A DNA stretch of 64,000 bases, taken from assembly GCA_964106645.2 (NCBI GenBank), contig OZ067039.1; one strand, 5' to 3'. Source of the stretch: Podarcis pityusensis (Eukaryota). The translations under genes and the position numbers were made by a program. Shown piece by piece: positions 7,854-54,420 of this stretch. Under the pieces are notes generated by a model. It had not been told where the DNA came from and did not search any database. It was given only the letters and a program-made list of their open reading frames with translations. Position 1 is the first letter of the stretch. Every line of letters starts with the position of its first letter.

Positions 7854-8008
7854 NNNNNNNNNNNNNNNNNNNNNNNNNNNNNNNNNNNNNNNNNNNNNNN
7901 NNNNNNNNNNNNNNNNNNNNNNNNNNNNNNNNNNNNNNNNNNNNNNNNNNNNNNNNNNNNNNNNNNNNNNNNNNNNNNNNNNNNNNNNNNNNNNNNNNNN
8001 NNNNNNNN
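7854..8008. other. Assembly gap (155 N)
   Basis: Run of N, 43 nt past the stop codon. Confidence 1.
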
Positions 8009-18117: not shown

Positions 18118-18362
18118 CAGGTATGTCCAAAGTCTGTTTCGAGGGCCTAATCCAGCCCGCTGGTCGGTTTAATCCAGCCCCCGTGGCAGTTTATTTCCTG
18201 GGGTAAAATCCTAAAAAAATCTCATCAATTCTAAATTCAACCCTAAAAAAGCTCAACAACTTTGGGGTAAAATCCTAAAAAAAGTCAACAACTTTGGTCG
18301 GCCCTCACGGCCCTTCACTTCATCAAATCTGGCCCTCTTTGAAAAAGGTTTGGATACCACTG
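18118..18362. mobile_element. hAT-type MITE
   Basis: Imperfect TIRs caggtatgtccaaa / tttggataccactg with ggccc subterminal repeats; TSD not preserved. Confidence 0.6.
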
Positions 18363-53011: not shown

Positions 53012-53103
53012 CTGGGATGGGAATAACAGGAATGGTTTCGTTTGGCACCACTCGAGGCGAACTGCTGTCTTCCACATAGAAATGAGCTGTCTGAAAACAT
53101 TTT
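53012..53103 (-). CDS. PTPRG: PTPRG coding exon (~human exon 15), juxtamembrane region
   Basis: Translates (R)[30 protein letters not shown](D); acceptor cacag, donor gtaagg; 92 nt, phase 2/1. Confidence 0.97.
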
Positions 53104-53831: not shown

Positions 53832-53923
53832 CTGTACTTAATGCAAAGCAGGGAGCACAAGCTGGTCATCACAGAGAAGGCACTGAGGAGGAGAGCATCC
53901 AGAGGTCCAATGAGCCTGTGCAT
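53832..53923 (-). CDS. PTPRG: Candidate alternative first (or cassette) coding exon of PTPRG: hydrophobic N-terminus MHRLIGPLDALLLSAFSVMTSLCSLLCIKY(R)
   Basis: accATG context, in-frame upstream TGA at 53969-53971, donor CAG|GTAAAA in phase 2 matching exon 15, CpG-rich region upstream. Confidence 0.6.
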
Positions 53924-54420
53924 GGTGATGCTAAGCAAGGCAGGGCTTTCCAGCAGCCACGTCACTGCTCATTGCTGCCTTAATGAGCTGCTTGAGGCTG
54001 GGACTGAATATTTAATGAGCCTTGCTCAGCGTGAGCAGCTATTGTGACAAGCAGAGGGGCTGCTCTCAGCTGTCAGGAGCTCTTAACAATAGCCTGGACA
54101 GAGCAGAGAGAGAGAGAGCCCTCTTCCTGCCTCCCTTAATGAACTGCTGCTCCTCAACACCTGTGCGGGGTCCTGAACGCCTCCGCCTCCGCCGCGATTA
54201 GCTTCCCCGGCACGCAAGCCACTGCCTCTGCTTGTAAAGGTTTGCAGCGGTCTCTCTTCCGCACAGCACGGCTTCTGGAATTACGGCCAAGCAGAAAAGC
54301 CCACTCCATCCCGCCAGCTTTGCTGACACTGTCAAAGCAATTTGTAGTGCCATTGTTTCCAGAACAGAGGTACATAGCAGAGGGCTTGGGGGGGGGGTGC
54401 AGGGGGGTGCAGAGAGAAAA
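53924..54420 (-). promoter_or_regulatory. Putative intronic promoter / 5' UTR of the short PTPRG isoform
   Basis: Locally GC/CpG-rich (54160-54320), CRE-like TGACGTG at 53958-53964, three TAATGA motifs (53981, 54013, 54137), G-runs at 54382-54406; no recognisable repeat. Confidence 0.5.

What the first reader, a model, noticed from the sequence alone, without database searches (positions are those of the whole stretch)
53832..53971. Candidate alternative first exon giving an ectodomain-less, signal-anchored PTPRG isoform
Seen: 728 nt upstream of exon 15, the minus strand reads tcaccATG CAC AGG...AAG TAC AG|gtaaaa, i.e. MHRLIGPLDALLLSAFSVMTSLCSLLCIKY. The CAG|GTAAAA donor is in phase 2, exactly what exon 15 needs (AG+A = Arg), giving ...[13 protein letters not shown]. 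An in-frame TGA lies 45 nt upstream of the ATG, and a CpG-rich promoter-like region lies beyond. The peptide has a ~19-residue hydrophobic stretch followed by KYRK (positive-inside pattern) and two cysteines. Established: PTPRE makes a cytoplasmic isoform from an internal promoter. Inference: a 681-aa PTPRG with both PTP domains but no carbonic-anhydrase/FNIII ectodomain, anchored by its own short membrane segment and so uncoupled from ligand. It is too short for the ORF track. I cannot tell whether predicted-isoform databases already contain it.
Basis: partly seen in the sequence, partly recalled or inferred. Interest (0 to 1): 0.85.

Follow-up and report, generated by a model that had tools for sequence, protein, structure and literature searches.

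The report
Lizard short PTPRG isoform first exon
This is the lizard copy of a known internal first exon of the PTPRG receptor gene (mouse 'exon 14a', variant 2), which makes a phosphatase without its outside part; in lizard and two other non-mammals an extra upstream start codon may add a short membrane anchor, which nobody has tested.

Summary
The exon is real and is the orthologue of mouse Ptprg exon 14a (variant 2, NM_001347593, 667 aa), supported in mouse by cDNA and 5'-RACE since 2006 (PMC1431701, PMC11215419). A published mouse exon-14a primer matches 53963-53943 at 18/21, once in the window and never in shuffles. So an ectodomain-less PTPRG from an internal promoter is not new. The mouse start (13 aa) corresponds to the lizard's second ATG (53869). 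It adds 18 aa and completes a 19-residue hydrophobic stretch (KD 2.15-2.18) followed by basic residues. That fits an N-out/C-in signal anchor, but constraint on the extension is weak (pN/pS 0.6-0.74, against 0 for the core) and membrane insertion is untested. The promoter is conserved but is not a CpG island (o/e 0.39-0.45). The scan had no earlier PTPRG report on other DNA. Verdict: known isoform type in a new species; the anchor is a plausible open detail.

The parts
53832..53923 (-). Coding part of alternative first exon (orthologue of mouse exon 14a) from the upstream ATG: 30 codons + 2 nt, phase-2 end
   Evidence: same ATG, length and donor in L001 and L002-L010
53867..53869 (-). Second in-frame ATG (Met19); gives 12 aa + junction Arg = 13 aa, the length given for mouse exon 14a; 663-aa product
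   Evidence: mouse ORF starts at nt 94, lizard equivalent nt 98
53840..53896 (-). Codons 10-28: 19-residue hydrophobic stretch with two Cys, followed by Lys-Tyr-Arg; candidate signal anchor (inferred)
   Evidence: KD19 2.15 lizard, 2.18 in L001 and L002
53826..53831 (-). Splice donor GTAAAA; conservation ends just after it
53924..53966 (-). Inferred 5' UTR; 53966 corresponds to nt 1 of the mouse transcript and is the A of a CA dinucleotide (initiator-like)
   Evidence: mouse primers match 53965-53943; context; start site is inferred from mouse
53967..54166 (-). Conserved promoter-like block with two CTCATTAA copies (54019-54012, 53987-53980) and AATGAG (53973-53968); in-frame TGA at 53971-53969
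   Evidence: up to 97% identity to L009; motifs at identical offsets (-96, -64, -50) in L001 and L009
8052..40805 (-). PTPRG exons 16-30 (D1 with intact WPD and [10 protein letters not shown] motifs, D2, stop at 8054-8052)
   Evidence: Pfam PF00102 on four exons scanned separately

Best explanation
An internal promoter in the intron before PTPRG exon 15 starts a transcript near 53966. Its first exon (orthologous to mouse exon 14a) splices in phase 2 to exon 15 and on through exon 30, giving a PTPRG with D1, D2 and the C-terminus but no carbonic-anhydrase-like domain, FNIII domain or normal transmembrane helix, so it cannot be controlled directly by contactin or CO2/HCO3- binding. Shown: orthology, conservation, open frame. 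Taken from mouse: capped start and splicing. Inferred: in lizard and the two other species scanning ribosomes meet ATG 53923 first (A at -3) and make the 681-aa form, with leaky scanning to ATG 53869 giving a 663-aa form like mouse V2. The N-terminus most likely holds the enzyme at a membrane, by an N-out/C-in hydrophobic anchor in the long form and possibly by acylation of the two conserved cysteines in both. I put the exon's identity at about 0.93, use of the upstream ATG at about 0.7, and true membrane insertion at about 0.4-0.45 overall.
For: Mouse exon-14a primer (nt 4-24) matches 53963-53943 at 18/21, unique, 0 of 100 shuffles; RACE primer F matches 20/21, 0 of 2000 shuffles. Mouse V2 begins in exon 14a with 13 aa and joins exons 15-30, 667 aa. 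Its 5' exon was confirmed by oligo-cap 5'-RACE in six tissues. Codons 20-30 have 0 non-synonymous and 2 synonymous changes against L001 and L002 (Fisher p 0.04). Same donor and a phase-2 acceptor 656 nt downstream in L002. CATCACCATG is identical in all three species, and changes inside the hydrophobic stretch are conservative while residues 2-9 vary freely.
Against: No lizard junction read or start site was obtained; none of the runs holding the stretch is on record as RNA. Only two distinct orthologous sequences, so the statistics are thin. Extension pN/pS 0.60-0.74 is not significantly below 1 (p 0.3-0.7), and its lack of indels is shared by the non-coding block upstream. Mouse is annotated from the second ATG and described as cytoplasmic, though from sequence alone. 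V2 was not amplified from mouse hippocampus and has no annotated human counterpart.
Confidence: 0.8

Rival explanations
1. Same first exon, but the working protein starts at the second ATG (663 aa) and is cytosolic, as annotated in mouse; the upstream ATG is a weakly used or neutral extension.
For: Core codons are invariant while the extension has 8 amino-acid changes and pN/pS 0.6-0.74; mouse ORF start maps to the second ATG with a net 4-nt shorter leader; classed as 'catalytic' with no transmembrane segment in PMC1431701.
Against: The upstream ATG and its context are identical in three species and come first after the inferred start site; codons 10-18 are more hydrophobic than their base composition gives (p 0.02, post hoc).
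Confidence: 0.3
2. The sequence is an in-frame 99-nt cassette exon (acceptor AG at 53932-53931, phase 2 to phase 2) spliced into full-length PTPRG.
For: The lizard has an AG there and 53930-53832 is a multiple of three.
Against: L001 and L002-L010 have AA at that place; the mouse cDNA extends upstream of it and starts with a capped end; it would add a second hydrophobic segment after the transmembrane helix.
Confidence: 0.03
3. The block is only a conserved enhancer of homeodomain-type sites; the exon is silent in lizards.
For: The highest identity (97%) lies in non-coding sequence upstream of the ATG; no lizard RNA evidence here.
Against: Conservation stops at the donor, the core changes are synonymous only, and the orthologous mouse exon is transcribed and spliced.
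Confidence: 0.05

Closest known systems
Mouse Ptprg variant 2 (NM_001347593 / NP_001334522; cDNA AK144283; exon 14a), rat X6 (PMC11215419, PMC1431701)
   Same: Homologous first exon at the same place, 13 aa from the second ATG, joined to exons 15-30, no ectodomain or normal transmembrane helix.
   Different: Lizard and L001/L002 have an in-frame ATG 54 nt further upstream (681 aa against 667 aa) that completes a 19-residue hydrophobic stretch; mouse V2 is described as cytoplasmic. The mouse peptide letters themselves were not available to me.
Internal-promoter forms of Ptpre and Ptpro ('catalytic' and 'TMcatalytic' classes, PMC1431701 Table 8)
   Same: Receptor PTP gene using an internal first exon to drop the ligand-binding ectodomain.
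   Different: Those TMcatalytic forms keep the receptor's own transmembrane segment; here any anchor would be newly supplied by the alternative exon.
Type III (reverse, N-out/C-in) signal-anchor proteins (own knowledge)
   Same: Short neutral or acidic N-region, about 19 hydrophobic residues, basic residues on the C-terminal side.
   Different: The stretch is rich in Ser/Thr/Cys and only marginally favourable on an unweighted insertion scale (-0.8); untested.

Membership tests
Ptprg exon 14a / variant 2 isoform | First exon lies in the intron directly upstream of exon 15 | tested here: met
   728 nt upstream in lizard, 656 nt in L002; mouse description
Ptprg exon 14a / variant 2 isoform | Sequence homology to mouse exon 14a | tested here: met
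   primer 18/21 at 53963-53943, 0 of 100 shuffles; RACE primer F 20/21, 0 of 2000
Ptprg exon 14a / variant 2 isoform | In-frame Met giving 13 exon-encoded residues | tested here: met
   ATG 53869 gives 12 aa + Arg; nt 98 against mouse nt 94; count and spacing only, mouse peptide not seen
Ptprg exon 14a / variant 2 isoform | Open frame through exons 15-30 with D1 and D2 | tested here: met
   phases and lengths by coordinates; PF00102 hits exon by exon
Ptprg exon 14a / variant 2 isoform | Spliced, capped transcript in this species | tested here: inconclusive
Ptprg exon 14a / variant 2 isoform | No transmembrane segment (cytoplasmic) | tested here: inconclusive
   true of the 663-aa form by length of the hydrophobic run; the 681-aa form has KD19 2.15
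Type III signal anchor | About 19 or more hydrophobic residues near the N-terminus, conserved | tested here: met
   KD19 2.15-2.18 in three species
Type III signal anchor | Positive charge on the C-terminal flank, not the N-terminal | tested here: met
   N-region net about 0 (lizard) or -1 (L001); Lys-Tyr-Arg follows
Type III signal anchor | Purifying selection on the residues added by the upstream ATG | tested here: inconclusive
   pN/pS 0.60-0.74, p 0.3-0.7
Type III signal anchor | Membrane integration with the catalytic domains in the cytosol | not testable with these tools
   needs fractionation and topology assays; no DeepTMHMM or SignalP here
CpG-island promoter | CpG observed/expected at least 0.6 with GC above 50% | tested here: not met
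   o/e 0.39-0.45, GC 0.53-0.56

The most novel reading that the evidence does not exclude
The exon-14a isoform is not cytoplasmic but carries its own N-terminal membrane anchor, made from a conserved upstream ATG in lizards and probably birds. The mouse form may also be membrane-bound: the best placement of a mouse RACE primer puts the in-frame reading RELLIAFLF directly before the annotated ATG, so the annotated start could be too short. PTPRG would then make a ligand-independent membrane phosphatase with a second, unrelated anchor.
Probability: 0.4. Interest if true: 0.55.

Novelty: new member of a known kind. Interest (0 to 1): 0.36.

Why it matters
The short isoform has been listed in mouse for twenty years, but my searches found only two papers naming it and no functional or localisation study. 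Conservation between mouse, lizard and two further amniotes shows it is old and under selection, not cDNA noise. If the longer N-terminus is an anchor, the 'cytoplasmic' label is wrong at least outside mammals, and there is a ligand-independent membrane pool of PTPRG activity. Such a transcript would survive knockouts aimed at 5' exons and be missed by ectodomain antibodies (inference). This matters to PTPRG specialists; it is not a new mechanism.

Tried and rejected
Protein searches with the exon peptide found only read-through gene calls on genomic contigs of two species groups or nothing; their length limit excludes 667-681-aa proteins, so whether predicted-isoform databases hold the lizard form is unanswered. 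No Pfam family for the peptide. Cassette exon rejected (acceptor not conserved). CpG island rejected. CTCATTA is not enriched window-wide (10 found, 12.3 expected); only its local clustering and conservation stand out, and that test is post hoc. Paper searches for a chick or lizard form or for localisation data found nothing. No structure prediction: a 30-aa peptide without an alignment would not be informative.

Full report
Observation. The minus strand carries an ATG at 53923, 30 open codons, AG and a GTAAAA donor at 53832/53831, an in-frame TGA at 53971-53969 and an acceptor at 53103, 728 nt downstream and in matching phase 2. Exons 16-30 of PTPRG were located one by one; four scanned separately hit Pfam Y_phosphatase. 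The region upstream has the most CpG in the window but o/e is only 0.39-0.45, so it is not a CpG island.

Conservation. The 30-aa peptide found one hit, at 76% identity, among 1.84 billion representatives, and a follow-up found close kin. All are read-through gene calls on genomic contigs (L001; L002-L010) and give two distinct orthologous exon sequences. The tool gives only run ids; I take them for non-human amniotes, probably birds (inference: the mouse primers fit them less well than they fit the lizard). Both keep CATCACCATG, both ATGs, the 92-nt length, the upstream in-frame TGA and the donor. In L002 a phase-2 acceptor for exon 15 follows 656 nt later. Against 20 kb of L009, 54166-53827 is the best block (81% over 341 nt, E 2e-83), and identity falls from about 0.9 to 0.27 right after the donor, as expected of an exon end. 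Codons 20-30 have no amino-acid change and two silent ones (p 0.04); codons 2-18 have eight amino-acid changes, pN/pS 0.60-0.74, not significant.

Identity. PMC11215419 describes mouse Ptprg-V2 (NM_001347593, 667 aa), which starts in an alternative 'exon 14a' encoding 13 aa and joins exons 15-30. It rests on cDNA from E11 spinal cord and embryonic eye, is predicted in rat, rabbit, guinea pig and hamster, has no annotated human counterpart, and was not amplified from hippocampus. The paper's exon-14a primer (nt 4-24) matches window 53963-53943 at 18/21, the only match, with none in 100 shuffles. That places mouse nt 1 at 53966, the A of a CA dinucleotide, and the mouse ORF start (nt 94) at the lizard's second ATG (nt 98), which gives exactly 13 residues. 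PMC1431701 had already confirmed this 5' exon (AK144283) by oligo-cap 5'-RACE, positive in six tissues, and classed the product as 'catalytic', without signal peptide or transmembrane segment; its inner primer matches the lizard 20/21. The finding is therefore the lizard orthologue of a known exon.

Mechanism. Shown: homology, conservation, frame. Taken from mouse: capped start and splicing. Inferred: the promoter is the 200-nt conserved block upstream, with CTCATTAA twice and AATGAG once at identical offsets in three species; these resemble homeodomain sites of the POU6 type (from memory, a lead only), which would suit neural expression. An out-of-frame ATG at 53972 lies just upstream of the inferred start and would be excluded. 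The first ATG met is then 53923, with A at -3, so the 681-aa form is the expected main product in lizard, with leaky scanning to 53869. Residues 10-28 average 2.15-2.18 on Kyte-Doolittle in all three species; changes inside that stretch are conservative and those in residues 2-9 are not; the N-flank is neutral or acidic and the C-flank basic. That fits an N-out/C-in anchor that leaves D1 and D2 in the cytosol. Against it: the stretch is rich in Ser, Thr and Cys, marginal on an unweighted insertion scale, and selection on the extension is not demonstrable with two orthologues. The two invariant cysteines could be acylated in either form (inference from N-terminal palmitoylated proteins, own knowledge).

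A lead on mouse. The outer RACE primer, placed without gaps, scores best in all three species with its last base on the A of the second ATG, with a near tie 15 nt upstream that is also in frame. It then reads RELLIAFLF in frame, more hydrophobic than shuffles of its last seven codons (p 0.002, post hoc). The placement is uncertain (118 of 2000 shuffles score as well against the lizard) and mouse nt 29-66 are unknown to me, so this only suggests checking whether the mouse start is annotated too far downstream.

N gaps (1961-2100, 7854-8008) were not filled. The run search gave no holder on record as RNA. Length limits of the protein search mean I could not check whether a predicted 681-aa lizard or bird isoform is already in databases.

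Verdict. Real, conserved, and known in mouse; new only as a non-mammalian member with a longer, possibly membrane-anchoring N-terminus. Interest 0.36; about 0.55 if the anchor is shown.

Noticed in passing
window 56508-56369 (-); L009 9477-9617; L001 about 960-1060: Conserved block (75% over 141 nt, E 2e-20) ending in a pyrimidine tract and CAG at 56400-56398, like a splice acceptor. What follows loosely recalls mammalian cassette exon 14 (from memory) but no frame is open in both species, so it may be a decayed exon 14 or an unknown exon.
   Followed up: partly
window 43011-42730 (-): The scan's second candidate first exon (Met-Gly start, acidic linker) has no tblastn match in L009 (best E 0.84). 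L009 ends before exon 16, so this is not a full test; L009 has an unrelated-looking MGNF-start ORF at 18321 at roughly the collinear place.
   Followed up: partly
window 43809-43701, 60371-60159, 61728-61662, 63281-63114 (-): Further conserved non-coding blocks shared with L009 (65-84% identity), several AT/TAAT-rich; candidate enhancers.
   Followed up: no
window 24485 (-), exon 21 acceptor: The lizard exon 21 seems to begin three codons later than I recall for the mammalian protein, which would explain part of the 663 against 667 aa difference; recalled, not tested.
   Followed up: no
window 55085-55000 and 54994-54930: A stretch of about 60 nt occurs twice in direct orientation about 90 nt apart (seen as the same translated segment in two ORFs); probably a small local duplication in a repeat element.
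   Followed up: no
window 53972-53931 (-): Out-of-frame ATG at 53972, conserved in L001 and L009 as part of the AATGAG motif; would form a 13-codon upstream ORF only if transcription starts upstream of the mouse-equivalent site.
   Followed up: partly
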